Below, one piece after another: positions 886 through 47,193 of a stretch of 64,000 nucleotides of DNA. The notes beneath the pieces are model-generated. The model worked only from the letters and a program-made list of their open reading frames with translations, made no database searches and was not told the origin of the DNA. Every line of letters begins with the position of its first letter. Position 1 is the first letter of the stretch. The stretch is taken from positions 197,033 through 261,032 of IMG/VR virus record IMGVR_UViG_3300033997_000092. The stretch is one strand, 5' to 3'. The translations under genes and the position numbers were made by a program.

Positions 886-1431
886 TTAGCCGCCCCATGT
901 GTAGTTGAATGTCAAGTCGTTGCCTTTCAGCACCTTTGACATATCGATTGCACTTCCAGCAAGGACCATATCAGCATTGCTGCCAACATCGCCTATAGTA
1001 CCGATACCAACAAAGTAAGCAGGCTGGCTCGAGGTCATATCAACAGCAGCCGTAGCACAAGTTGCGAACAAGAACCAACTAACTGTACCGCCAGAAATTT
1101 TAGTAAATTCTTCAGCACGTTCACTCAGAGGGAAACGGAACTTGGTCGGACCTATGTTGTGACCTTGTAGTGTGTTCTCATAACGGCACCACGCCTTCAA
1201 CGTACTGCCTAATGCTACTGCCCACTGATTTAACAGAGTCAGGCTGTACTGGCCACGCACTGTACTGAACTGAATACCTGAACCGGCAACAGTGCTAAAC
1301 ATAGCCGCTTCAAATTGTGCTTTGGTAGGCATCGGGCCATTATAAATAGCCATCATCTTGCGGTACGCACCTGAAGTAACGTAATCAGCGTTTGCTAAAG
1401 GTACTAAACCGTCCGTTGCTAAAATTGTCAT
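886..1431 (-). CDS. Virion fibre-like protein, paralogue family 'S' (short form)
   Basis: IYNGPMPT...GTVSWF...GTIGDVGSNADMVL motifs shared with neighbouring paralogues. Confidence 0.6.
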   Translation of the reverse strand: MTILATDGLVPLANADYVTSGAYRKMMAIYNGPMPTKAQFEAAMFSTVAGSGIQFSTVRGQYSLTLLNQWAVALGSTLKAWCRYENTLQGHNIGPTKFRFPLSERAEEFTKISGGTVSWFLFATCATAAVDMTSSQPAYFVGIGTIGDVGSNADMVLAGSAIDMSKVLKGNDLTFNYTWGG

Positions 1432-1442
1432 GCGAAGGCTCC

Positions 1443-2384
1443 TTACTCTACTTCGTTAACTACGTTGCCGAACACTTTCAGGTGAACCAGCGAGAAACTA
1501 TCACTGATGCCTGCACGACGACGATTTAATACAGCTACTTTACCGTCAAGTGGACCACCTGCACTCAGCACCATAGCAGGCACCTGTGTAGCATCGGCAG
1601 ACTTGTAAGTTGCTGTTGTTGGGTTAGCTGGAACCAATACACACCACGTTACGTCTGTAGTAGTTTTGTCGAACGTGTTTGATGGCAGCTCACTCGCAAA
1701 GAAACGAATGAAGCGATACTGCAATGTGTTAGCGGCCACTGTACCTGTATCATTCAGGAAACGAACACGCCACAGACGCGCACTAATTGGAGCGAATGTA
1801 ATTTCAATGCCCGCAGCGTTGTATGTTTTCACTGCTACGTTTGATGCCGCTGGAACCCATACAGATCCATCGTAGTATTCGACGTTGATGTTGCTGGCAT
1901 TACGAGTGGTTGCACTCATGTTAGCAAACAGTACCTTGTTGATACTGCACACATCGCCAAAATCAAATTGAATGAAACGACCTGTGACTAAGTGTGTCGA
2001 TGCTGTTGCTGTAACGGCGCTATCCTCTAAGCCATTAACATAGCCAACAGGTTCATCCATACCAGGAATGTCAGTAGATATTGCCTGAGGCAAACACTGT
2101 ATACCTGCAGTACCGTTATTGAGGCGTTCTCCGTGCATTTTCAAAGTAAACAAGGTCGACGCATGTTCAAAAGCTAACAGTTCTTGGCCGTAACCAGCGC
2201 TGTTAACCGCAGTAACACGAATACCAGCAATAGCATTGGCGAAGATACTGTCCATGTTAGCTAACTGGAATGGAAACGTACCCATAGACTCAGGTACTGT
2301 TCCTGACATTAAAAACATATTCCAGGCAGTGCCTCCTTTAAGAAGCATAGACTGAGCTTGAGCAAATTGTGCGGCTACGTACAT
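1443..2384 (-). CDS. Family 'L' virion protein with discoidin (F5/8 type C)-like insert
   Basis: FIQFDFGDVCSINKV...VEYYDGSVW...FAPISARLWRVRF is a typical galactose-binding/discoidin pattern. Confidence 0.65.
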   Translation of the reverse strand: MYVAAQFAQAQSMLLKGGTAWNMFLMSGTVPESMGTFPFQLANMDSIFANAIAGIRVTAVNSAGYGQELLAFEHASTLFTLKMHGERLNNGTAGIQCLPQAISTDIPGMDEPVGYVNGLEDSAVTATASTHLVTGRFIQFDFGDVCSINKVLFANMSATTRNASNINVEYYDGSVWVPAASNVAVKTYNAAGIEITFAPISARLWRVRFLNDTGTVAANTLQYRFIRFFASELPSNTFDKTTTDVTWCVLVPANPTTATYKSADATQVPAMVLSAGGPLDGKVAVLNRRRAGISDSFSLVHLKVFGNVVNEVE

Positions 2385-2394
2385 AACTCTTACC

Positions 2395-2937
2395 TTATGT
2401 CAGTGAGAAATTAAATTCTGAAGTGGATGCTTCCATCAGAACTACAGTGATTGGCGATACAGTTATTTCCATGGAGGATACATCGCTATAGAATATTTCA
2501 CGCACTGCAGGTGATGTAGAGAATTGTGATTCACCTTCACCTACCAATGTAATACGTGAATCCAACAAGCGTCCATCGAGATACTGTTCAGGCGTTACGT
2601 TGACTGTGATGTTATTCGCATCATAAGTAGCAATGTTTGACTTATACCCAAGCATTTCATTCAGGTTAAAGTCTTCAGGTGCACCAAAGAAGTACAGACC
2701 TATATAACCGTAGAACAGACTTGTATCTTGATTGAGTGTAGCTTCCGCTTCTTGGAAAACACTCAACGATACTTGGATACCATTGATGTCAATGTTCTGG
2801 TCGATTTCACTTGTTATAAGTGGGCGGAAGTTAGTGTCTCCTTCCAGTACACCCAACATAGTTGTTGAGATTGTGTCTGGAAAAAGTACACCAGGCTCGA
2901 ACCGTTGAGCATAGTAATTATGAACTTGGATAAACAT
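2395..2937 (-). CDS. Virion-associated protein, paralogue family 'T'
   Basis: C-terminal half (NITVNVTP...FYSDV...VSPI) aligns with 5058..5399. Confidence 0.5.
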   Translation of the reverse strand: MFIQVHNYYAQRFEPGVLFPDTISTTMLGVLEGDTNFRPLITSEIDQNIDINGIQVSLSVFQEAEATLNQDTSLFYGYIGLYFFGAPEDFNLNEMLGYKSNIATYDANNITVNVTPEQYLDGRLLDSRITLVGEGESQFSTSPAVREIFYSDVSSMEITVSPITVVLMEASTSEFNFSLT

Positions 2938-2940
2938 AAA

Positions 2941-3477
2941 TTACCCCAGCAGGTTACTGATGTTCACACGGAAGTCAGCTATACTGTATTTCTTACCTAC
3001 AGTTACAGCCAGTGAGCCTACTTTAATGTCTTCTGTTGATGCTGGTAATCCTACAGTACAACAGAATAATGTTCTGGCACTTGTAGTTGCTGATCCGTGT
3101 AAAGCTATTACCATAAGGCCCACATCACCAGCAGCAAGACCTTGCATGAAGTCAGTACGTTGGCTGAACAAGAACGCTGCTCCTGAAGGACCTTCATGGC
3201 GCTTTTGTGTGAATGACGTCATCGCAGTAATAGCACCCGCAGTTGTTACCACAGAACCCAAGCGAGTTCGCGTAGACACCAGATTGGTATTCACTAAATC
3301 TAAGTTGATAATACCAGTCGTAGCGTTTTTAGCAGTGCCATTTATATAGTTCATTTCAGCAGGAGTAATTGCAGGACCTGTGTAAAAGAAAATCGATACA
3401 CGATCTGTATTCGCTAAATCGTTCCTGTGGAATGGGTACTTCAAGAAACTCAACATCGTCTTATTTGCTAAAAGCAT
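2941..3477 (-). CDS. Family 'S' virion protein
   Basis: MLLANK...FYTGP...GLM...TVGLP motifs, clear paralogue of 3477..4025. Confidence 0.6.
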   Translation of the reverse strand: MLLANKTMLSFLKYPFHRNDLANTDRVSIFFYTGPAITPAEMNYINGTAKNATTGIINLDLVNTNLVSTRTRLGSVVTTAGAITAMTSFTQKRHEGPSGAAFLFSQRTDFMQGLAAGDVGLMVIALHGSATTSARTLFCCTVGLPASTEDIKVGSLAVTVGKKYSIADFRVNISNLLG

Positions 3478-4025
3478 TACGACTCTCCTAATAAGTCTGT
3501 CAGCCTGACATACATATCATTCACACGGATTACATCGTTGGCTGCAATTGTTGTATTTTCTATCTCAATCTCTTTGCCAGATCCAGGTAGACCTACTGTC
3601 ATAAGTACCGCTGCGTGAATAGGACCGTTGTAGTTGTCGTACAGCATACACAACATTAGTCCAGTCGTACCTGCTTGAAAACCTTTCAGTACCGAGGTCA
3701 CTACTGGCCGCAAACGTAAACAGAACTCGTCTACTGTATTGCCATACGCTTTGTTCACTAACAACTGACCGCTAACCGTAGTTCCACTGATAGAAGTGTA
3801 GGCTAAGTAACGGCGAATGCTGTTTAAATATGTTGTGAACGCACTGCCTCCTGCCATTGCCCCCGTTCCAGTTGTAACAGCAGTTTTAAGTGCGGCTAAT
3901 TCTCCTGCAGTCAGTTCTGGACCTTCGTACAGGTAAGTCACTGCGTAACTTGCAAATGCTCCGCCTGCTGCCGCCCGGAAAGGATTCATCAAATAGGCAG
4001 TCATGCCTTTGTTTGCTAAGAACAT
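3477..4025 (-). CDS. Family 'S' virion protein
   Basis: MFLANK...LYEGP...GLM...TVGLPGSGKEIEI. Confidence 0.6.
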   Translation of the reverse strand: MFLANKGMTAYLMNPFRAAAGGAFASYAVTYLYEGPELTAGELAALKTAVTTGTGAMAGGSAFTTYLNSIRRYLAYTSISGTTVSGQLLVNKAYGNTVDEFCLRLRPVVTSVLKGFQAGTTGLMLCMLYDNYNGPIHAAVLMTVGLPGSGKEIEIENTTIAANDVIRVNDMYVRLTDLLGES

Positions 4026-4042
4026 TAGGACTCTCCTATTTA

Positions 4043-5050
4043 TTAGAACAACTGCCCGTAAGCTAAGTACAGATCAAACTTACTATCGTTGTTGGCTTGC
4101 ACAGGAGCGTTGAAGCGCAGACGTCCATTTCCACCAATACCAGAAGCACTTACCAAGAAACAGAAATCATCTGTGTCAAACGGGCTATTGCCGTAAGAGT
4201 CAATCAGTTTTGCCTTTAAATTTGTCAACACTGTTGCTGATGTGAAATCAGGAACGATAACTGCCCAAGTAGGAACAGCTAAGTTGTATTGTACATCACC
4301 AGCTTCATAATCAAACTTACCGAAGTAGGCAAATGCCATAAGCACGGTACCTGCTGTACCTGACGCCAGTTTACGAATACGGAAGCGTGTTGCAGTTACT
4401 TCTGGGAAGCGAATGATTTGGTAACCTGTTACGTTCAGTACAGAAGTAACCAGCTCTACCCAAGCACTACCGTTATAGTATTCGATGACCATCTGACGCA
4501 TAAACGTGTTTGCAGCAGTACCTTGTTTGATACCGAAGCAGTTAACGTCTATAGGACGATTATATTCAAATTCAAAAACTTCGTTGGTGTTTGTGCTTAC
4601 AGTCACATAACTTGTTGTCAGACCTGCGAAGTTTGCTTCGGAACTCTGCTTGTACATAAACAGTTCAAACAGTTTGTGGTCACGGTAATCACCATACGCT
4701 TTAAAATTCGATGGGCCATAAACCAAGTGATTGGCGAAATTGGTACTTACAACACTTCCGCCTTGATACACGTTCACAGTCTCACCAGCATATTTGGCAA
4801 CTATGTCTGCGCCTTTCAACAAAGAACTACGCTGAGTCAATTGCACTTCAGATACAGATGGATACGACAGTGTTGCCAGGAAAGCGTTTTTGCAGTTTTG
4901 GATAAGGTTAGCTGCGTTTGGAGCAAAACCAATACCATCGAAATCTGTAGGAGGTGTGCCTTCGAAAGCATACACCAGCATGTTTGTGTTTGCTGGAAAG
5001 TTTACTTGCATACCAGCAATCATTGTTTCAGTTGCGCCAAATACGTGCAT
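4043..5050 (-). CDS. Family 'L' virion protein with discoidin-like insert
   Basis: AFEGTPPT; IEYYNGSAW...FPEVTATRFRIR; PTWAVIVP. Confidence 0.65.
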   Translation of the reverse strand: MHVFGATETMIAGMQVNFPANTNMLVYAFEGTPPTDFDGIGFAPNAANLIQNCKNAFLATLSYPSVSEVQLTQRSSLLKGADIVAKYAGETVNVYQGGSVVSTNFANHLVYGPSNFKAYGDYRDHKLFELFMYKQSSEANFAGLTTSYVTVSTNTNEVFEFEYNRPIDVNCFGIKQGTAANTFMRQMVIEYYNGSAWVELVTSVLNVTGYQIIRFPEVTATRFRIRKLASGTAGTVLMAFAYFGKFDYEAGDVQYNLAVPTWAVIVPDFTSATVLTNLKAKLIDSYGNSPFDTDDFCFLVSASGIGGNGRLRFNAPVQANNDSKFDLYLAYGQLF

Positions 5051-5057
5051 GTTTACC

Positions 5058-5399
5058 TCACGATAAGTTTAACACTATTGTAAAATTACTCGATTGTCCG
5101 ACCGAAGCAACGATTGGTGTGACACCAGCTTCAAAATCTAAGACATCGCCATAGAAGAATCCATCTAACACAACTGGACTCACATTAACAGTGAAGTTAG
5201 CAACACTGTCTTGGTAAAACAGATTGTTTTCATTTTGACTTGCATTCGGGAATAAAGGAGCACTCACTCCTTCGAGAGGCCTCAAAATTCTAAATGTCTT
5301 TGGGTCCAGCGCTACAGATACCTCTACTGTCTCACCAAACAAAGCACCAGAATCAAAACCAGGACCATAACGTCCACTTGCTTTTACTAAGTTGCTCAT
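5058..5399 (-). CDS. Family 'T' virion-associated protein
   Basis: NFTVNVSP...FYGDV...VTPI similar to 2395..2937. Confidence 0.5.
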   Translation of the reverse strand: MSNLVKASGRYGPGFDSGALFGETVEVSVALDPKTFRILRPLEGVSAPLFPNASQNENNLFYQDSVANFTVNVSPVVLDGFFYGDVLDFEAGVTPIVASVGQSSNFTIVLNLS

Positions 5400-5899
5400 A
5401 TCACGTGCCTCACTTTAAAGTTCAATGCACGGTATGTTTGACCTAATGTCATAGATGGATTGTTGATTTTCAAATCACCATCATCATTTAAGTCCGTTAT
5501 AGTTCCTTTCATTGAGAACAGTGAATTACCGTTTACGTTGTAGGCTACGTTTGATGCACGGTCATACAGCAAGAACCAGTCAGGTACTCCAGAGGTCAGT
5601 ACAGTTACAGGAACTCTGCCTAACTGAAAGTTTATATTCAAGTCAGGTGCACTTCCTATATTTGGATAGGTTGCTTTATCAATATCGATGTAACCAACTA
5701 TCTTACCTCCACGTGCAACAATAGCAGAGTACAGTCCTGCAAAGCTGCCGAGAAAAGGATTAGATGTGTTAGTTATGTAAGCACCAACTTCCTGTGCAGT
5801 CATATAACCTTTTTCAATCAACACGAACTGATAACGAAAGCCTGAATTTTTCAAAGGATATTGGTAGATTAATGCAGCCGCATCTTTATTCATTCTCAT
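5396..5899 (-). CDS. Family 'S' virion protein (start revised to ATG 5899)
   Basis: ATGA overlap with the upstream stop; GVPDWF...GTITD...GDLKIN motif. Confidence 0.55.
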   Translation of the reverse strand: MRMNKDAAALIYQYPLKNSGFRYQFVLIEKGYMTAQEVGAYITNTSNPFLGSFAGLYSAIVARGGKIVGYIDIDKATYPNIGSAPDLNINFQLGRVPVTVLTSGVPDWFLLYDRASNVAYNVNGNSLFSMKGTITDLNDDGDLKINNPSMTLGQTYRALNFKVRHVI

Positions 5900-6813
5900 G
5901 TTGCAGTTGCCTCCAGCTTTATGTCTTCTGTTATGAAAACAATAGGAGTATAAACAGACGGCTCTTCCCTGTTTGTTTCGCATTCTGATTTATCGAATGC
6001 AAATACTGGACACCGAGTTGTTGACCAATCTAACGCAGTAGGATATCCTAAGATATTGTACATGATTGGACAAAGAAGGATTGTTTGTATTGGACGAGAT
6101 ACGCAGCGTCTCTGGTCTGTTGTAGCGTAGAATGTGTCAATTGACCATCCTACTTGGCCAGCACTAGCAACAGCAACAGTCAGTTTTATGCCTGAGCATA
6201 CGCGCTCAACCAATCCACTTACTATATTTGTCCCAGAGCCTACAATCAAACCCAAGTCTTGCCAACTTCCATTCACAAGACACTCAAGGCGTACTGATGT
6301 TGGGCGTTGGTTTGTAGCACTGGCTATACCTGGAGCGTATTTAACATCTTTCACAAAGCACGGTTCAAATGTCTGCACTATTTCAGCAGATATGAAATCC
6401 GTTCCCCATACAATTGGAATGTTCCTTTGTGGAGCAGCCAAGCTGTAGTGTGGCGTGTAGAATGCGAATATGTCTCTTGGGACAGTTGTGCCAAAGTACA
6501 TTGATTCAGGACAAACACGTATTTCTTGCTGACCGTCGTCACTATAGGCTCCTAAGTGTTTAACCAAAGGCGCTCCATATGTTGTAGTCAACTTGTTGTA
6601 AGATATTGTCCCTAATCTGCCTGCCGCAGACAATGTATGTGAGGCAATGCAATGTTCGGTGAAATACTTCAGAGCTTCTGGTGAAGCTGGAGATTCCATC
6701 AGAATATCCAACTCACTTGTATCCATGAACAATGCAAGCCACGTATAAGCTGACCCAGATTGTCCTGCTAGTCCATTAGCAATACTTGCGTTCCAGTGAA
6801 TTAATTCCATCAA
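5896..6813 (-). CDS. Divergent family 'L' virion protein
   Basis: Similar size and position; RLECLVNGSWQDLG discoidin-like strand. Confidence 0.45.
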   Translation of the reverse strand: MMELIHWNASIANGLAGQSGSAYTWLALFMDTSELDILMESPASPEALKYFTEHCIASHTLSAAGRLGTISYNKLTTTYGAPLVKHLGAYSDDGQQEIRVCPESMYFGTTVPRDIFAFYTPHYSLAAPQRNIPIVWGTDFISAEIVQTFEPCFVKDVKYAPGIASATNQRPTSVRLECLVNGSWQDLGLIVGSGTNIVSGLVERVCSGIKLTVAVASAGQVGWSIDTFYATTDQRRCVSRPIQTILLCPIMYNILGYPTALDWSTTRCPVFAFDKSECETNREEPSVYTPIVFITEDIKLEATAT

Positions 6814-6834
6814 GAATCTCCAACGTAGGACTGC

Positions 6835-7401
6835 TTAACGTGGAACTACCAGGTTACCGCAGATGGTGATGTCGATATTTGCTAATGTTGCGTCACGAAT
6901 CTCAGGAGACTTCATACGGAATATTTGACCACGTTCAAATACTATTGAAGTACCGCCTGTAGATGCAAACACGCCTGAAGTGGCACCAGCAGCAAACGTC
7001 AGTGTGCCTACTTGGGTCGCTACTCCACCTACCACACGCTCAACAATGAATTGAGAAGTTGCAGTTGCCGCAGTTGTTGCTACAGCCAGAGAGTTTGCAA
7101 AGTTTGCACCAATTTGGAAAGTACGTGCGGCTATGTGTTTACACACAATGTCCAAAGACTTCGGACGGTCGAATATAGTTAGACCTATATCATATACGTC
7201 GAATTCAGTGTTTTCCGCCAGCACCCACTTGTTCAATTGGGCATTGAAAATGTATACGCCATTCGTGATAACCACACTGCCTATTACTTCAAACAGTTGT
7301 TTATCGACAGCACCGACAACAGAAGGCAATACTGAGCCACTGTTTTCTGCTGTACGGGACAGGCGACTTGATTCTAACAAGCTTAAACCATCAGATAACA
7401 T
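6835..7401 (-). CDS. Tail-fibre-type protein with C-terminal beta-sandwich
   Basis: YDIG...ATTAATA...VGTLTFAAGATSG...DATLANIDITI pattern seen in phage fibre C-termini. Confidence 0.5.
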   Translation of the reverse strand: MLSDGLSLLESSRLSRTAENSGSVLPSVVGAVDKQLFEVIGSVVITNGVYIFNAQLNKWVLAENTEFDVYDIGLTIFDRPKSLDIVCKHIAARTFQIGANFANSLAVATTAATATSQFIVERVVGGVATQVGTLTFAAGATSGVFASTGGTSIVFERGQIFRMKSPEIRDATLANIDITICGNLVVPR

Positions 7402-7411
7402 TGTTCGCTCC

Positions 7412-7639
7412 TTAATTGACGCGAGCTTCGCCTGTTAATGGGACAGAGAATTCAACACGCAAAGTGTTTGAATCTACCGATGAAACTGACTTAGGCAGTA
7501 TCTTTTGGAGCTTGCCTTGCCAGTTAACAAACACGTCCACAAGAACATTAGTTCTTCCAAGATTGTGTGGGATGCTCCACACAGTGTTTGCATGATCTTG
7601 TTTGTGCGAATAGCCTGCACCACGAACTTTAAGTGTCAT
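7412..7639 (-). CDS. Small fibre-module protein (WxIxHNLG module)
   Basis: A single copy of the ~65-aa module also found in 7652, 8348 and 12614. Confidence 0.55.
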   Translation of the reverse strand: MTLKVRGAGYSHKQDHANTVWSIPHNLGRTNVLVDVFVNWQGKLQKILPKSVSSVDSNTLRVEFSVPLTGEARVN

Positions 7640-7651
7640 AGTTAGGCCTCG

Positions 7652-8272
7652 TTACATACAAAGAACAGTACCAGTCACTGCATTAGTGAATGTCAATACT
7701 GTTTGGTTAGTTGTTGTGTGTTGGACTGAGCTAGGTAATAACTCAAATCCATCCGATGTAATGAAACGGATGATAGGAGCATATCCCAGCATGTGGTTCA
7801 CAGTTACTTCTGTTGTAGCCACGTCCACTTCCATTTCATATGCAACATCAGGCTTAGTCATGCCGTCCAGGTTACCTATCATTATGATAGCGTGACCAGT
7901 AGTTGCTTGCGCGAAAGTAATCTCAACTGTATCAGCATCAATGCCTTCAACGCTGTCAGGAACAACAAGCTGGTTATCGCTGTTGTATACTTGGACAATT
8001 ACTTTAGCACTGTTCATACCGTGTGGGACAGTCCACACAGCACTTGCAGAGTCTTGCTGGTGTATGTAAGTATTACGCTCTTGCAGCAGAGGTACCCACA
8101 GTACACTTTGACCATACGCTATAGCAAACAGCAAACGACCATCTACTACAGCTACACGGTTTGGAACAGCATATTGTACGCCAGCAGAGTCATCACCTAA
8201 AACAACATGACTCAAAGCATTACCTTGCATGTCCAGACCGCCGAACATCGTTAATCCGCCTAAGACCTTCAT
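7652..8272 (-). CDS. Fibre protein with two WxVxH(G/N)xx modules (start revised to ATG 8272)
   Basis: RBS AAGGTG before MKVLGG; the longer ORF runs through a terminator. Confidence 0.55.
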   Translation of the reverse strand: MKVLGGLTMFGGLDMQGNALSHVVLGDDSAGVQYAVPNRVAVVDGRLLFAIAYGQSVLWVPLLQERNTYIHQQDSASAVWTVPHGMNSAKVIVQVYNSDNQLVVPDSVEGIDADTVEITFAQATTGHAIIMIGNLDGMTKPDVAYEMEVDVATTEVTVNHMLGYAPIIRFITSDGFELLPSSVQHTTTNQTVLTFTNAVTGTVLCM

Positions 8273-34315: not shown

Positions 34316-34852
34316 ATGGTAGAAGTTCATGCGTACACCGACGGTTCATGTATCAACAATCCGGGACCAGGCGGCATAGGCATCCACATGAGGAAGCCCG
34401 CTACAAAAAAGAAGAAGAAAATCAGCCTACCGTTCGGTTATACGACAAACAATGAAATGGAATTGATGGCTATATTGATCGCACTTATATCATTAAAGCC
34501 TGGAAAGTTTGTTACAGTGTTCTCCGACAGTGAATATTCTATAAATTGTCTGTGTTTGTGGCACCACGGTTGGGCAGCAAACGGTTGGCGTAAACCAGAA
34601 CACAACAAAAAGCTGATACAAACCATAGTCAAGTGCTTTTACTTTCATCGTGTAGAGTTTGTTAAAGTCAAAGCTCACTCAGGAATCAAGTACAACGAGA
34701 GTGCAGATGCTTTGGCTAGACAGGGCAGCGCTATCGCCCAAAAGAAGCGAAACAGTCCTGATTGTTTTACGTTAGAGCAGTGCCTACAGCAAGCTGAATT
34801 GTACTTTAAGAAATATGCAGGCTTCAAAGCACCAAACATAATAACAGCATAA
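34316..34852 (+). CDS. rnhA: Ribonuclease HI
   Basis: YTDGSC.NNPGPGG, TTNNEMELMA, SDSEY, VKAHSG..YNESADALA catalytic motifs. Confidence 0.95.
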   Translation: MVEVHAYTDGSCINNPGPGGIGIHMRKPATKKKKKISLPFGYTTNNEMELMAILIALISLKPGKFVTVFSDSEYSINCLCLWHHGWAANGWRKPEHNKKLIQTIVKCFYFHRVEFVKVKAHSGIKYNESADALARQGSAIAQKKRNSPDCFTLEQCLQQAELYFKKYAGFKAPNIITA

Positions 34853-37843: not shown

Positions 37844-39040
37844 ATGAATTTTCAACAATCGAATCCTATTATCATCGGCGGCGATACTGAATTCAATGAA
37901 GTAAACTGGCTCGATAACAGCTATATCATGGCAGCCGACCGTATTATGGTGGAAGGCGTTCGTAGTGGTAATCGCACAGGCGTAAACACTTACAAAGTAT
38001 TCGGCCACTTTATCAATACTAACTTGATGGAAGGCTACCCTCTGCTTACAACAAAGCAAGTATTCACCCGTCCTATGTTCCATGAACTGATTTGGATGTT
38101 GAACGGTGAAACAAATATTCAATACTTGCTGGACAATGATGTACATATTTGGGACGGCTGGGCTAACACTAACGGTGACTTAGGTCCTGTATACGGTGAA
38201 CAGTGGCGTAATCGTGAAGACACTCAGATCCTGATGCGTAACGACCCGTACTACGAACAACGCCTGTCGTACTATGAAAGCAACGGCTACACAAACGTAG
38301 CTACCAACCCAACGCTGGATGTGTACAGCCGTCGCATTGACCAAATTCAGGTAGCATTGGATCGTTTAAAAACAAACCCAGACTGCCGCCGCATTATCGT
38401 AGATGCGTGGAATCCTGGTCTGCTGCCTACAGACGAGCATCCAACAAAACAAGCTGAACAGGGCCGTCAAGCATTACCTGCATGTCATGCGTTCTTCCAA
38501 TTCGGCTCCAGTGAACATCATCGTAACGATATTACTATCGATGACTTAGGCATACTGAACATCTATCGTGTAGGCAACAAAGTCTATATGAGCGGTGTTG
38601 AAATTGATGTCCAGTTGTCTGATGTTGAGCAAATGGATGAAGTAGGTCTGTTGCAGCTTATCCGCCGCTACAAAGATAGCCGTGTTCCATTTAAGCGTAT
38701 GTTAGATACTCACCTGCACTTGCGTAGTAGTGATGTGTTCTTGGGTCTGCCGTTTAATATCAGTTCCTACGCTGCTTTGTCTGGTTTGTTCTGTGCTGTT
38801 CTTGGTATGATACCCCGCGGTCTGACACTCAGCTTTGGTGACATGCACATTTATAGCAACCACGTTGAGCCTTTGCAGAAGCAAGCGAATAACTTGGAAA
38901 ACACTAAGTACCCACCAAAGCTTGTAACTATTGGTGTTGGTCCTGAGCAAAACGCCGATTTGAAGAACCTCAGCATTGATTGTTTCCGTGTGTTGCAATA
39001 CAGTCACTGTGGTAAAATCACAGCCGACGTGGCCGTGTAA
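37844..39040 (+). CDS. thyA: Thymidylate synthase with insertions
   Basis: NRTGVNT, YPLLTTK, IWDGWA..NGDLGPVYGEQWR, RRIIVDAWN, ALPACH, RSSDVFLGLPFN, GDMHIYSNH. Confidence 0.95.
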   Translation: MNFQQSNPIIIGGDTEFNEVNWLDNSYIMAADRIMVEGVRSGNRTGVNTYKVFGHFINTNLMEGYPLLTTKQVFTRPMFHELIWMLNGETNIQYLLDNDVHIWDGWANTNGDLGPVYGEQWRNREDTQILMRNDPYYEQRLSYYESNGYTNVATNPTLDVYSRRIDQIQVALDRLKTNPDCRRIIVDAWNPGLLPTDEHPTKQAEQGRQALPACHAFFQFGSSEHHRNDITIDDLGILNIYRVGNKVYMSGVEIDVQLSDVEQMDEVGLLQLIRRYKDSRVPFKRMLDTHLHLRSSDVFLGLPFNISSYAALSGLFCAVLGMIPRGLTLSFGDMHIYSNHVEPLQKQANNLENTKYPPKLVTIGVGPEQNADLKNLSIDCFRVLQYSHCGKITADVAV

Positions 39041-43729: not shown

Positions 43730-43989
43730 ATTTGTCAAAACTAACCAAAGCAATCCGCTTTGAAACCCAGGCGGATAAGTTACTGAAAACTTGGGACAGA
43801 CGTTATGAAGAAGGCTGCACTTACGCATATCAGCGGGTATGTGAGGCTGGACCTGACATGACCCAAGTAAATCAAGTCATACAAGAGTTGGAGCTGAATA
43901 TTGCTCTGTCTGACTTAGGTGGCCAGAAGACAAGTGCTTTCGATGAAGGCGTGTTGGCTTATATTCGTAGTTATCGTTTAGCGAGGTAA
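43726..43989 (+). CDS. Hypothetical protein
   Basis: ATGA overlap with the upstream stop. Confidence 0.45.
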   Translation: MNLSKLTKAIRFETQADKLLKTWDRRYEEGCTYAYQRVCEAGPDMTQVNQVIQELELNIALSDLGGQKTSAFDEGVLAYIRSYRLAR

Positions 43990-43991
43990 GT

Positions 43992-44114
43992 ATGTCAGGT
44001 AAAGATGATTTAGATTTAGATAGCTTCGACGAACTGGAAGTTCCAGACGTTGATATTGAAAACAATCAGCCTGCGGAAGACGAAGGTTGTGAAGGCGGCG
44101 CTTGTAAAATCTAA
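43992..44114 (+). CDS. 40-aa acidic peptide resembling the C-terminal redox tail of class Ia ribonucleotide reductase alpha (not in ORF track)
   Basis: Translated by hand: MSGKDDLDLDSFDELEVPDVDIENNQPAEDEGCEGGACKI*; RBS GAGGT; exactly fills the gap between two operon genes. Confidence 0.8.
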   Translation: MSGKDDLDLDSFDELEVPDVDIENNQPAEDEGCEGGACKI

Positions 44115-44123
44115 GGAGATTTC

Positions 44124-44567
44124 ATGGCAAATTTCAACAAACAGGCAGCAACTGTTGTCAGTGGCTTCCCTGGAATCGGCAAATCACACTTCTTTAATCG
44201 CCAACAAGAATTAGGTCTGAAGGTGATGGACAGCGACAGTTCAAAATTCCCAAAAGACAACTTTCCACAGAACTACATGCAACACATTGGTGAGGCTATG
44301 TATCAGTGCGACTACTTGTTGGTAAGTTCACATGATGCGGTACGCCGTGCTTTGGTAGATGCGGGTATAGTTTATACATTGGTCTATCCGCATATTTCAC
44401 TGAAAGATGAATATATGCGTCGGTATAAGGAGCGCGGTTCTCCTCAGCCGTTCTTAGATCTAATGGAAAAGAACTGGGACAGTTTTGTTACTGGTTGTAT
44501 TAACCAAACAGGCTGCAAGCATGTTGTGCTTCAAGCTGGCCAATATATGTCTGACGTAATAGGGTAG
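44124..44567 (+). CDS. P-loop nucleotide kinase-like protein
   Basis: Walker A SGFPGIGKS; DSDSS; RYKERGS lid. Confidence 0.7.
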   Translation: MANFNKQAATVVSGFPGIGKSHFFNRQQELGLKVMDSDSSKFPKDNFPQNYMQHIGEAMYQCDYLLVSSHDAVRRALVDAGIVYTLVYPHISLKDEYMRRYKERGSPQPFLDLMEKNWDSFVTGCINQTGCKHVVLQAGQYMSDVIG

Positions 44568-44571
44568 GCTT

Positions 44572-45288
44572 ATGCTCAGTGAACTGTTAAAATACCTACA
44601 GCAAAACACATCGTTGGCCATGCTGCCTGCGTGGTCTGAAGATCTTATGTATATGTCTAGTGAAGATTCTGATCACTTGCAGCGTACAGCAACCAGTGCT
44701 ATGATGGAAACGTATAAGCTTTTGACTAATGCACTTCCACGTGTGTTCAGCAAAAGTATTGCATTATCTCAGGCACCAAACGAAAACACCCGTGTCACGT
44801 TTGACGTACTGAACGGTTGTGTTGAAGACTACACGGACATGATAAAGACTACATTTATCGCTCGTGGTCAACCGATAGTTGATTACATGGTTGCATCTAT
44901 CCGCAATCAGGTTACAGATTTTGAAATGACTGTCAACTGTTTTATTTTAACTTATACAACTGTTGGTCCATTACTTAATCTAATCCGTACAGGACAATCT
45001 ATTGAACTTGCCTTGTCTGTTTTAGAGTGTTTACCTTCGCACGATAATGAAAATGGACCAATATACTGTCCTGTACTGCCTCCAGGGCCAATAGAACTCT
45101 ATGACTTAGTTGCTACAAGGCGTGGTTTTACTGTAGGCCAACGGGTTACAGAAATTGTTTCAAGGTACGATTGCTTGGTAGCGCAATCAGGCAACAAAGA
45201 AATGTCACTTTACTGGGAAGCTTTGAAAAACTTACCAGGCAACAAAAAAGTTCTGGGGTCATTAGGCTATGAAAACAACTGCAGGTGA
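44572..45288 (+). CDS. Hypothetical protein
   Basis: 238-aa ORF. Confidence 0.5.
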   Translation: MLSELLKYLQQNTSLAMLPAWSEDLMYMSSEDSDHLQRTATSAMMETYKLLTNALPRVFSKSIALSQAPNENTRVTFDVLNGCVEDYTDMIKTTFIARGQPIVDYMVASIRNQVTDFEMTVNCFILTYTTVGPLLNLIRTGQSIELALSVLECLPSHDNENGPIYCPVLPPGPIELYDLVATRRGFTVGQRVTEIVSRYDCLVAQSGNKEMSLYWEALKNLPGNKKVLGSLGYENNCR

Positions 45289-45967
45289 GTTGCGTAAACG
45301 CGGCTTCAATATTCCAGACAATATACCTGACTGCGCTACTACAGAACTCAACGGATACGGAGTTGGTACTGTGTCAGCAGGCCATGACAATTCCCTTCAG
45401 GTAGACTTGCTTGCCAACTTGGGTCCTTTCGAGTGGGTATCGGCTACTGTTGTTGCTAAAGGTCCAGACAAGATAACGCTTGACAAAACTCTATGGCCAG
45501 CTCCTCTGACTTTAGATCATGTCCAGCAGCGCACTCCAACAGAATGCCTGTCTGCCTGTATCGCTATGATAACGCGCATACCTATTGACCGCGTAGTTGC
45601 GGACTTCCATGAGCGTTATAGGCGAGACTGGACTGTAAATGTATCTACATACTTCAACGAAATTGGTTTGAAGCATACGGTGCGTTCTGCTGTCGACCGT
45701 GTCATTGAAGAAGGCTTTGTGTATACAGCCCGTGTGTCTTCGCTGAATAATATCGGCGGCGGCCATGCTGTTGTAATACATAATTGCCCGGATGCTGGTT
45801 TCACTGTTTACGACCCAAACAAAGGTCGTCCTGATACCCGCTATTATGAGTTTGTTAAAACAGACGATCCACTGTCTGAAACATTAACGTCCTACATTAC
45901 TACAACCCAAATAGCTGAGCAGGATTTGCGTGTGTTCTGGGCAGCACAACAGGAGAAAATAGAATGA
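45269..45967 (+). CDS. Peptidase C39-like cysteine protease
   Basis: QQRTPTECLSACIAM...GHAVVI...VYDP (Q, C, H, D arrangement). Confidence 0.7.
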   Translation: MKTTAGELRKRGFNIPDNIPDCATTELNGYGVGTVSAGHDNSLQVDLLANLGPFEWVSATVVAKGPDKITLDKTLWPAPLTLDHVQQRTPTECLSACIAMITRIPIDRVVADFHERYRRDWTVNVSTYFNEIGLKHTVRSAVDRVIEEGFVYTARVSSLNNIGGGHAVVIHNCPDAGFTVYDPNKGRPDTRYYEFVKTDDPLSETLTSYITTTQIAEQDLRVFWAAQQEKIE

Positions 45968-47023: not shown

Positions 47024-47050
47024 AAGAGGGAGCAATTTGCTCCCTCTTTT
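47024..47050 (+). terminator. Rho-independent terminator
   Basis: AAGAGGGAGCAA-T-TTGCTCCCTCTTTT. Confidence 0.85.
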
Positions 47051-47163: not shown

Positions 47164-47193
47164 TTGACACCCACCCATATACTCTGCTATAAT
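47164..47193 (+). promoter_or_regulatory. Sigma70-type early promoter
   Basis: TTGACA-18 bp-TATAAT with extended -10 TG. Confidence 0.85.

What the first reader, a model, noticed from the sequence alone, without database searches (positions are those of the whole stretch)
43992..44114. Free-standing gene encoding only the redox-active C-terminal tail of ribonucleotide reductase alpha
Seen: a 40-codon ORF below the ORF-track cutoff, with its own RBS, tightly packed between two operon genes. It encodes an acidic, probably disordered linker ending EDEGCEGGACKI-stop. Established: E. coli class Ia NrdA ends ...DDGCESGACKI, and its CxxxxC pair (C754/C759) shuttles electrons from thioredoxin/glutaredoxin to the active site. 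No nrdA body is adjacent, so it does not look like a frameshifted remnant. Inference: the phage makes the RNR swinging arm as a separate peptide. It could (a) re-reduce host or phage RNR in trans to boost dNTP supply, (b) complete a split phage RNR that lacks a tail, or (c) act as a decoy for host RNR or redoxins. It sits immediately upstream of a nucleotide-kinase-like gene and in the same arm as thyA. I know of no description of such a peptide.
Basis: partly seen in the sequence, partly recalled or inferred. Interest (0 to 1): 0.9.

Follow-up and report, generated by a model that had tools for sequence, protein, structure and literature searches.

The report
Stand-alone ribonucleotide reductase tail peptide
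This phage gene encodes only a copy of the flexible, two-cysteine end of the bacterial enzyme that makes DNA building blocks, and the same tiny unnamed gene proves widespread in phages and in bacteria such as Neisseria and Moraxella, pointing to an unrecognised way of tuning that enzyme or its electron supply.

Summary
Window 43992-44114 (+) is a 40-codon ORF with its own Shine-Dalgarno, and it ends in EDEGCEGGACKI-stop. This matches the class Ia RNR alpha (NrdA) redox tail.

It is not a one-off and not phage-specific:
- It belongs to a large unnamed family: 433 protein clusters at 90% identity, every named one called 'hypothetical'.
- Members are about 45 aa, with net charge about -13, and are predicted disordered.
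- They occur in many jumbo and other phages and in bacterial chromosomes. In Neisseriaceae the gene sits between iscS and iscU. In Moraxella it lies next to flavin reductases and an Rrf2 regulator. In a marine gammaproteobacterium it follows katG.
- The tail is almost invariant, and a middle module and an N-terminal acidic helix are also conserved.

A complete peptide-bearing phage genome (pEa_SNUABM_30) has no RNR of any class. Bacterial lineages with the peptide also have tailed NrdA. So the 'split RNR' idea fails as a general explanation.

In at least five jumbo-phage lineages the gene lies 2-5 kb from thyA.

Best reading, which is inferred: a detached NrdA swinging arm that thioredoxin or glutaredoxin keeps reduced and that acts in trans on host RNR. 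Whether it supports or inhibits the enzyme is unresolved. I found no published description.

The parts
43983..43986 (+). Shine-Dalgarno GAGG, 5 nt upstream of the ATG. It overlaps the end of the upstream ORF, whose stop is at 43987-43989.
   Evidence: Read directly from the sequence.
43992..44114 (+). 40-codon ORF plus stop. It encodes an acidic, disordered small protein of the free-standing NrdA-tail family.
   Evidence: An identical protein is on record from 6 contigs, the longest 261 kb. Close homologs are P0001 and P0002. The family profile finds 433 clusters. AlphaFold2 gives mean pLDDT 61 and pTM 0.18.
44004..44042 (+). N-module, residues 5-17 (DDLDLDSFDELEV). It is an acidic/hydrophobic motif and contains the only predicted helix, at residues 9-14. 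NrdA has no equivalent.
   Evidence: Family alignment A2, AF2 secondary structure, and close parallels in the bacterial peptide of L141. The sequence drifts within the subfamily but keeps its hydrophobic/acidic pattern.
44040..44075 (+). M-module and linker, residues 17-28 (VPDVDIENNQPA). It is almost fixed within the window's subfamily. It parallels the hydrophobic-then-acidic stretch just before the tail in real NrdAs.
   Evidence: Subfamily comparison, compared by eye with the NrdA pre-tail sequences listed.
44076..44111 (+). C-module, residues 29-40 (EDEGCEGGACKI). This is the NrdA-type redox tail. Cys33 is at 44088-44090 and Cys38 at 44103-44105. The stop is at 44112-44114.
   Evidence: G, C, E, G, A, C, K and I are invariant in A2. 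147 of 174 family proteins end in exactly GCEGGACKI. The tail matches NrdA ends in 15 viral loci and most of the bacterial loci and E. coli R1.
44124..44567 (+). Downstream gene of 147 aa with a P-loop and a match to phrog_4182 (unknown function). It is co-transcribed, but it is not a conserved partner in other lineages.
37844..39040 (+). Thymidylate synthase homolog of 398 aa, 5 kb upstream on the same strand.
   Evidence: tblastn with a phage ThyA and Pfam PF00303 at E=1e-71. The same thyA-to-peptide proximity occurs in L171, Alexandravirus and Derbicusvirus and Asesino.
47024..47048 (+). Strong intrinsic-terminator-like hairpin with an 11-bp stem. It is the likely end of the transcription unit that holds the peptide gene.
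   Evidence: This is a consensus scan only.

Best explanation
The ORF encodes a genuine 40-aa, strongly acidic, intrinsically disordered protein. It belongs to a large, previously unnamed family found in phages and in bacteria.

Its last ~12 residues reproduce the C-terminal dithiol 'swinging arm' of class Ia ribonucleotide reductase alpha (NrdA). The preceding ~10 residues resemble the NrdA pre-tail. An N-terminal acidic helix motif is an added docking element.

Proposed mechanism (all inferred):
1. The phage makes the peptide together with its nucleotide-metabolism genes.
2. Host thioredoxin or glutaredoxin keeps its Cys-x4-Cys pair reduced, as they do for the NrdA tail.
3. The free tail enters the active site of host NrdA in trans and exchanges disulfide with the active-site cysteine pair.
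4. It thereby serves as an auxiliary or spare electron shuttle. This would sustain host RNR turnover when the phage has no RNR of its own. In bacteria it would do the same when the thiol and Fe-S systems are stressed.

Shown here: the sequence modules, their conservation, the family's distribution, and the absence of a phage RNR in a relative. Inferred: reduction by redoxins, engagement of NrdA, and the positive sign of the effect.
For: (1) The tail matches NrdA tails closely and is under strong constraint. It is invariant in A2. 147 of 174 family proteins end in exactly GCEGGACKI. 34 distinct DNA versions use all synonymous codons. Conservation this tight, including the terminal K-I, suggests the peptide must fit the same sites as the NrdA tail.

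(2) The only solved-structure matches are R1 C-termini. One of them is the isolated 25-mer R1 tail peptide, chain 1qfn_B. From memory, that entry is its mixed-disulfide complex with glutaredoxin-1, so a free tail would be a redoxin substrate.

(3) The complete genome of the peptide-bearing phage pEa_SNUABM_30 has no RNR alpha, no RNR beta and no class II or III enzyme. Any RNR target there must be the host's.

(4) Nucleotide-metabolism context recurs. thyA lies 2-5 kb away in the window, in L171, in Alexandravirus, in Derbicusvirus and in Asesino. In Asesino a MazG gene follows directly.

(5) The peptide tail matches the tail type of NrdA in related bacteria. Pectobacterium, Brenneria and Tatumella NrdA end DDGCEGGACKI.

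(6) Bacterial copies sit with Fe-S assembly, flavin-reductase and katG/GST genes. This fits a thiol-redox role.

(7) Disorder plus a short helix fits a tethered-arm mimic with a docking motif.
Against: No biochemical or expression data exist for this family.
- The tail built into NrdA has a very high local concentration, so the benefit of a free tail is not obvious.
- The two published precedents for proteins acting at this step are inhibitory: the Neurospora UN-24 C-terminal domain in yeast (PMC3618301) and Sml1 (known to me from memory and from the title cited in that paper).
- None of the bacterial contexts examined contains nrd genes.
- The partner of the N-module is unknown.
- Only 64 kb of the window's own ~261-kb genome was available, so an RNR elsewhere in it is not excluded.
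- The pattern searches fixed the tail residues in advance, which biases the codon analysis. The profile search is less biased but still uses tail words.
Confidence: 0.38

Rival explanations
1. RNR inhibitor. The free tail, anchored by its N-module, occupies the NrdA active-site channel or tail-docking surface. It either blocks regeneration by the enzyme's own tail or forms a dead-end mixed disulfide. This would throttle host dNTP synthesis. In bacteria it would act as a stress brake. In phages it would redirect or shut down host metabolism.
For: A free 135-aa C-terminal domain of an RNR large subunit forms a non-reducible complex with yeast Rnr1p and is toxic (PMC3618301). Sml1 is reported to inhibit by interfering with C-terminus-mediated regeneration (title cited; details from memory). 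The peptide is a small acidic disordered protein, like Sml1-type regulators. Co-location with stress genes in bacteria could fit a checkpoint.
Against: A phage with no RNR of its own and a 260-kb genome should need host RNR activity. Both cysteines are strictly kept, which a simple steric blocker would not require. The thyA and MazG neighbourhood points to boosting dNTP supply rather than blocking it.
Confidence: 0.2
2. General thioredoxin/glutaredoxin-coupled dithiol relay whose clients are not RNR. The tail is kept only because it is an optimal handle for redoxins. The variable N-module steers it to other clients, for example IscS/IscU persulfide chemistry in Neisseria, peroxide or aldehyde detoxification elsewhere, or a phage Fe-S or radical-SAM enzyme.
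For: The gene sits between iscS and iscU throughout Neisseriaceae. In other bacteria it lies next to an OYE-type flavin oxidoreductase and an Rrf2 regulator, a CysJ-like flavoprotein, or katG with GST and DJ-1. The N-module varies between lineages while the tail is fixed. The window and pEa_SNUABM_30 each encode a radical-SAM/Fer4_12 protein.
Against: The similarity extends beyond the Cys pair into the NrdA pre-tail. The tail, including the terminal K-I, is more conserved than redoxin recognition alone would seem to need. The recurrent phage neighbour is thyA, not Fe-S genes.
Confidence: 0.2
3. Redoxin decoy. The peptide is made in excess and soaks up thioredoxin or glutaredoxin, diverting reducing power or these proteins away from host processes.
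For: The isolated R1 tail peptide has been solved as a separate chain, 1qfn_B; from memory it is bound to glutaredoxin-1. The tail is highly conserved.
Against: A dithiol peptide consumes reducing power only if something oxidises it. A housekeeping bacterial copy inside the isc operon is hard to reconcile with self-poisoning of the redoxin pool.
Confidence: 0.08
4. Missing tail of a split phage RNR. Under this idea the phage encodes a tail-less NrdA elsewhere and supplies the arm separately.
For: Only 64 kb of the ~261-kb genome could be inspected.
Against: The complete genome of the peptide-bearing phage pEa_SNUABM_30 has no RNR at all. No NrdA body lies in any of the 24 viral loci with a free copy. 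Thalassolituus has both tailed NrdA and the peptide. A 773-aa RNR alpha chain, 7mdi_A, matches the peptide tail at its very end; from memory it is from N. gonorrhoeae.
Confidence: 0.03
5. Precursor of a ribosomally made, modified peptide (lanthipeptide-like). Some UniRef entries carry this as an automatic label.
For: Three UniRef entries are auto-named 'FxLD family lantipeptide'. The N-module contains F/L-x-L-D-like strings.
Against: No modifying enzyme, protease or exporter lies in any neighbourhood scanned. The window's peptide has no Ser or Thr after the N-module, so it could not form lanthionines. No NCBIfam model matches, including any lanthipeptide family model. The match to an enzyme tail would be left unexplained.
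Confidence: 0.03

Closest known systems
C-terminal redox tail of class Ia RNR alpha (E. coli NrdA Cys754/Cys759)
   Same: The last 9 residues follow the same G-C-E-(G/S)-G-A-C-K-I pattern. The run-up is acidic, and the hydrophobic pre-tail patch is similar.
   Different: The peptide is encoded on its own and is not attached to the catalytic barrel. It carries an extra N-terminal acidic helix motif. It occurs in a phage genome that lacks RNR entirely, and in bacteria that appear to have a tailed NrdA as well.
Isolated R1 C-terminal 25-mer peptide used with glutaredoxin-1 (PDB 1QFN)
   Same: It is a free peptide with the same tail. It shows that the tail can be handled as a separate molecule. 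That the partner chain is glutaredoxin-1 is from memory.
   Different: That peptide is a laboratory construct. Here nature encodes the free tail as a gene with additional modules.
Sml1 / Spd1-type small disordered RNR regulators of yeasts
   Same: They are small, disordered proteins that act at the step where the R1 C-terminus regenerates the active site (title cited; mechanism from memory).
   Different: There is no sequence relationship. The yeast proteins are eukaryotic, inhibitory and lack the Cys-pair tail. Pfam finds nothing in the peptide.
Neurospora UN-24 (PA) C-terminal incompatibility domain of the RNR large subunit
   Same: It is a free C-terminal piece of an RNR large subunit that acts in trans on another RNR alpha and forms a complex with it (PMC3618301).
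   Different: It is 135 aa, fungal, toxic, and was expressed artificially as a fragment. It is not a natural separate gene.
Acidic accessory proteins of the ISC machinery (IscX, CyaY)
   Same: They are small acidic proteins encoded in or near isc operons. The Neisseriaceae peptide sits between iscS and iscU.
   Different: No homology was detected in Pfam or NCBIfam. Those proteins are folded and lack the Cys-x4-Cys-K-I end. The role of IscX and CyaY is stated from memory.

Membership tests
Class Ia RNR alpha (NrdA) C-terminal tail module | C-terminal Cys-x4-Cys pair in the consensus G-C-E-(S/G)-G-A-C-K-I, ending the polypeptide | tested here: met
   The window tail matches the NrdA ends listed.
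Class Ia RNR alpha (NrdA) C-terminal tail module | Tail is covalently attached to the alpha catalytic barrel (PF02867) | tested here: not met
   The ORF is 40 aa. No NrdA body is found in the window or in any free-copy locus. No Pfam hit.
Class Ia RNR alpha (NrdA) C-terminal tail module | Reduces the active-site disulfide and is re-reduced by thioredoxin or glutaredoxin | not testable with these tools
   This needs enzymology. The only indirect support is the isolated R1 tail peptide chain 1qfn_B.
Split phage RNR (alpha made from separately encoded pieces) | A tail-less or fragmented nrdA in the same genome | tested here: not met
   The complete pEa_SNUABM_30 genome has no alpha or beta by tblastn and no RNR Pfam family among all CDS of 450 aa or more. 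The window's own full genome could not be tested.
Sml1/Spd1-type RNR inhibitors | Sequence membership in the family | tested here: not met
   No Pfam family at E<=0.1.
Sml1/Spd1-type RNR inhibitors | Binds R1 and blocks regeneration by the R1 C-terminus | not testable with these tools
   Binding and activity assays are required.
Lanthipeptide / RiPP precursor (FxLD label) | Core peptide with Ser/Thr plus Cys, and adjacent modification enzymes | tested here: not met
   The window peptide has no Ser or Thr after residue 11. No such enzymes appear in any neighbourhood. No NCBIfam hit.
ISC accessory proteins | Encoded within an isc operon | tested here: inconclusive
   Met in Neisseriaceae, where the order is iscS, peptide, iscU. 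Partly met in Moraxella, where the gene lies upstream of an Rrf2/IscR-like gene. Not met in phages or in other bacteria.
New family proposed here: free-standing NrdA-tail peptides | 35-90 aa, strongly acidic, N-terminal hydrophobic/acidic motif, hydrophobic-acidic middle patch, C-terminal C-x4-C-K-(I/L) end | tested here: met
   Alignment A2. Profile searches (433 clusters; 83 representatives at 50% identity). Composition and tails. Subfamily comparison.

The most novel reading that the evidence does not exclude
Free-standing 'RNR tails' would be a new class of small trans-acting proteins. They would be detached copies of an enzyme's own redox arm, fitted with a docking helix. Bacteria would use them to couple the thiol, Fe-S and oxidative-stress network to ribonucleotide reduction. 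Many phages would have captured them to control the host's dNTP supply without encoding an RNR.
Probability: 0.45. Interest if true: 0.85.

Novelty: new variant of a known kind. Interest (0 to 1): 0.78.

Why it matters
Ribonucleotide reductase is the bottleneck for DNA precursors, and its re-reduction step is one of the least understood parts of its cycle. A natural, separately encoded copy of the redox arm would be a new kind of RNR accessory factor.

It is conserved in hundreds of protein clusters, in jumbo phages and in human-associated bacteria (Neisseria, Moraxella).

It would explain how phages without an RNR could manipulate host dNTP synthesis. It would link Fe-S assembly and oxidative-stress loci to RNR or to the thioredoxin/glutaredoxin system. 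It would also provide a simple genetic and biochemical handle, a 40-aa peptide, for studying how the tail enters the active site.

Even if the target is not RNR, this is a widespread, strongly constrained and completely unannotated small protein.

Tried and rejected
- Megablast of the region against sequenced phages found no match.
- The first word-index protein search with the single peptide found only two close homologs. The alignment-based repeat was needed.
- A full-text search for the string GACKI returned only surnames.
- Four topical literature searches found no description of such a peptide.
- I fetched 50 kb of pEa_SNUABM_5 and found no tail ORF in it, so that genome was not useful.
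- Pfam, PHROGs and NCBIfam have no family for the peptide.
- Pfam on longer proteins that carry the module at their C-terminus gave nothing, so no informative fusion was found. The repeat-rich ~1,000-1,400 aa hits that were scanned are spurious.
- tblastn with the marine variant found nothing among isolated phages.
- I tested the idea that the N-module mimics the NrdB C-terminal tail that docks on alpha. The NrdB tails extracted from the loci share only the acidic/hydrophobic flavour. The register differs, and the NrdB motif is at a free C-terminus. I keep it as a lead only.
- Single-chain AlphaFold2 shows only disorder plus a short helix. Complexes cannot be predicted with the tools here.
- Zhang et al. 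2007 (Sml1 and the R1 C-terminus) is not held, so its details are cited from memory.
- A remnant or pseudogene origin is rejected because of the ORF's own start and SD, the conserved non-NrdA module, the family size, and its presence in a genome without RNR.

Full report
**1. The observation**

Window 43992-44114 (+) is a 40-codon ORF. A GAGG Shine-Dalgarno lies 5 nt upstream. The upstream ORF stops 2 nt before the ATG, and the next ORF starts 9 nt after the stop behind its own GGAG.

The product is very acidic and ends EDEGCEGGACKI. E. coli R1 chains in the PDB end DDGCESGACKI. When a family member is searched against all PDB sequences, the only matches are R1 C-termini. The DNA pattern for this tail occurs once in the window and in none of 100 shuffles.

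No NrdA body exists in the 64-kb window. thyA is at 37844-39040 on the same strand. The downstream gene has a P-loop and matches phrog_4182, but it has no kinase family hit. A consensus scan shows no strong promoter or terminator between about 41 kb and a strong hairpin at 47024-47048, so the ORF lies inside a long operon.

The window is 100% identical to a stretch of a 261-kb IMG/VR contig. It belongs, distantly, to the PaBG/Lu11/NCTB/Alexandravirus/Dickeya-JA11 clade of jumbo myoviruses, with at most 36% identity in a conserved tail protein.

**2. It is a family, not a curiosity**

- tblastn found annotated 'hypothetical' ORFs of 47-82 aa with the same end in Erwinia jumbo phages of two genera.
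- A degenerate DNA scan of IMG/VR gave 39 loci. Of these, 24 are free-standing ORFs of 26-86 aa and 15 are true NrdA ends. None of the free copies has an NrdA body nearby.
- The free copies fall into at least six unrelated gene neighbourhoods. These include T7-like replication modules and a marine group beside head-tail genes.
- Other subfamily queries find 48 sequenced phages of Erwinia, Klebsiella, Dickeya, Raoultella and Stenotrophomonas. Examples are Klebsiella phage Miami and, as a weaker match, Erwinia phage Asesino. Their tails vary slightly but keep C-x4-C-K-I.

**3. It is also bacterial**

One 'viral' locus, L018, is a chromosomal isc operon in the order IscR, IscS, 42-aa peptide, IscU, IscA, HscB. 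The peptide gene is flanked by the sequence I recall as the Neisseria DNA uptake sequence.

A scan of one genome per bacterial species was limited to 119 loci. It gave 20 complete free-standing copies and otherwise ordinary NrdA ends. The free copies are in Neisseria species, Eikenella, Moraxella and Thalassolituus. The NrdA ends are in Pectobacterium, Brenneria, Gilliamella, Shewanella, Pseudoalteromonas and others.

Contexts of the free bacterial copies:
- Neisseriaceae: always just upstream of iscU.
- Moraxella: after an Old-Yellow-Enzyme-type oxidoreductase and a luciferase-like monooxygenase, and before an Rrf2/IscR-like gene.
- Thalassolituus: after a CysJ-like flavoprotein.
- One marine gammaproteobacterium: after katG, beside GST, DJ-1 and a LysR regulator.
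- Another marine gammaproteobacterium: after cvfB.

The Neisseria and Moraxella proteins are on record from about 1,000 or more contigs, and all are named 'hypothetical'. A few carry an automatic 'FxLD family lantipeptide' label. A profile search finds 433 clusters at 90% identity and 83 representatives at 50% identity. Pfam, PHROGs and NCBIfam have no model. Four topical literature searches found no description.

**4. Anatomy and selection**

The family alignment shows three modules:
- an N-terminal hydrophobic/acidic motif;
- a middle hydrophobic-then-acidic patch;
- the tail.

Of 174 family proteins, 147 end in exactly GCEGGACKI. Most others are K-L variants or read-throughs, and only two singletons have lost a cysteine. 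Median length is 45 aa and median net charge is -13.

In the window's own subfamily the N-module drifts, but residues 18-40 are essentially fixed. Thirty-four different DNA tails encode the same nine residues using all synonymous codons. There is a caveat: the pattern search fixed those residues in advance.

Real NrdAs have a similar hydrophobic-acidic patch just before the tail. So similarity to NrdA spans about 20-25 residues, while the N-module is extra.

AlphaFold2 with the family alignment predicts disorder (mean pLDDT 61, pTM 0.18) and a single helix at residues 9-14.

Some longer proteins fuse the same modules to unknown N-terminal domains.

**5.

Option (b), a split phage RNR, fails as a general explanation.
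- I fetched the whole 259,771-bp genome of pEa_SNUABM_30. The only similarity to nine NrdA queries and to NrdB is the 13-residue tail of the free ORF.
- Pfam over every CDS of 450 aa or more finds no RNR family of any class.
- In Thalassolituus one species shows a tailed NrdA and another the free peptide.
- A 773-aa RNR alpha chain in the PDB, 7mdi, matches the peptide tail at its last 12 residues. I recall this chain as being from N. gonorrhoeae.

So the peptide coexists with tailed NrdA, or occurs with no phage RNR at all. The window's own full genome could not be read.

**6. What it most likely does**

Established knowledge (class Ia RNR mechanism, from memory and as summarised in PMC3618301 and PMC9669993): after each turnover the C-terminal cysteine pair enters the active site and takes over the disulfide. 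Thioredoxin or glutaredoxin then re-reduces it. The isolated R1 tail peptide has been solved as a separate chain (1qfn_B). From memory, it is bound to glutaredoxin-1.

The free peptide carries the same tail with the same extreme conservation. I therefore infer that it uses the same partners, namely the redoxins and the NrdA active site.

Two observations make me favour a supportive role as an auxiliary or spare electron shuttle for host RNR (confidence 0.38):
- thyA proximity recurs in at least five jumbo-phage lineages, and MazG follows directly in Asesino.
- A peptide-bearing phage has no RNR of its own.

The main rivals:
- An Sml1- or UN-24-like inhibitor (0.20). The only published precedents for trans action at this step are inhibitory.
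- A general redoxin-coupled dithiol relay for non-RNR clients such as the ISC machinery (0.20). The bacterial contexts favour this.
- A pure redoxin decoy, a split RNR, and a RiPP precursor are each unlikely, for the reasons given with each rival.

**7. Comparison and novelty**

The tail module is the known NrdA redox arm. The peptide fails the membership feature of being attached to the catalytic barrel. It has no sequence relation to Sml1-type regulators or to ISC accessory proteins.

I rate it a new variant of a known kind: the RNR redox arm, detached, separately encoded and given a docking motif. The family itself is new and unannotated.

**8. Verdict**

Interest 0.78.

Noticed in passing
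L018 (IMGVR_UViG_2541047228_000006), 1411-7765: A contig filed as viral in IMG/VR carries a chromosomal isc operon (IscR, IscS, peptide, IscU, IscA, HscB) followed by gyrA. It has Neisseria-type uptake sequences. At least this stretch is cellular, not phage.
   Followed up: yes
P0089 and P0097 (89 aa, ENA contigs of 586 and 878 bp): Two different sequences join the first 46 residues of IscU in frame to the peptide. This may be an assembly artefact or a real rearrangement next to iscU in some Neisseriaceae.
   Followed up: no
Window + strand arm 34316-63227 (one ORF, not pinpointed); pEa_SNUABM_30, one CDS of 450 aa or more: Each genome encodes a protein with Radical_SAM plus Fer4_12 domains but no anaerobic RNR. 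This may be a QueE-like or other Fe-S enzyme. It could be relevant because the bacterial peptide sits in the Fe-S assembly operon.
   Followed up: partly
pEa_SNUABM_30 (L044-L049): Two large proteins contain intein splicing/Hint domains (Pfam summary).
   Followed up: no
Window 47024-47048 and 47164-47193: A strong terminator-like hairpin with an 11-bp stem is followed by a perfect 12/12 sigma-70 consensus promoter with an extended -10 TG. This looks like an operon boundary with a host-type promoter inside a jumbo-phage genome.
   Followed up: no
Window 37844-39040: The thymidylate synthase homolog is 398 aa, and relatives are 346-392 aa. This is clearly longer than the 267-aa ThyA used as query. 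An extra domain or an altered specificity, such as a hydroxymethylase, is possible.
   Followed up: no
Window + strand arm 34316-63227 (one ORF, not pinpointed): A sigma-70 family protein (regions 2 and 4) is encoded in the same arm, together with an RNase H at 34316-34849.
   Followed up: no
UniRef names seen: Some Neisseria and Thalassolituus members are auto-named 'FxLD family lantipeptide'. Nothing in the sequence context supports this, so it is probably a mis-annotation that could spread.
   Followed up: partly
P0216 (131 aa) and P0223 (261 aa): These proteins fuse the N, M and C modules to a shared N-terminal domain with no Pfam match. Their tail has D instead of G before the first Cys. 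The domain might identify a partner if it were characterised.
   Followed up: partly
Window 45269-45967: This 232-aa ORF has a weak Peptidase_C39-like hit (E=0.0055, around a Cys near residue 90) and a solid match to phrog_4049 of unknown function.
   Followed up: no
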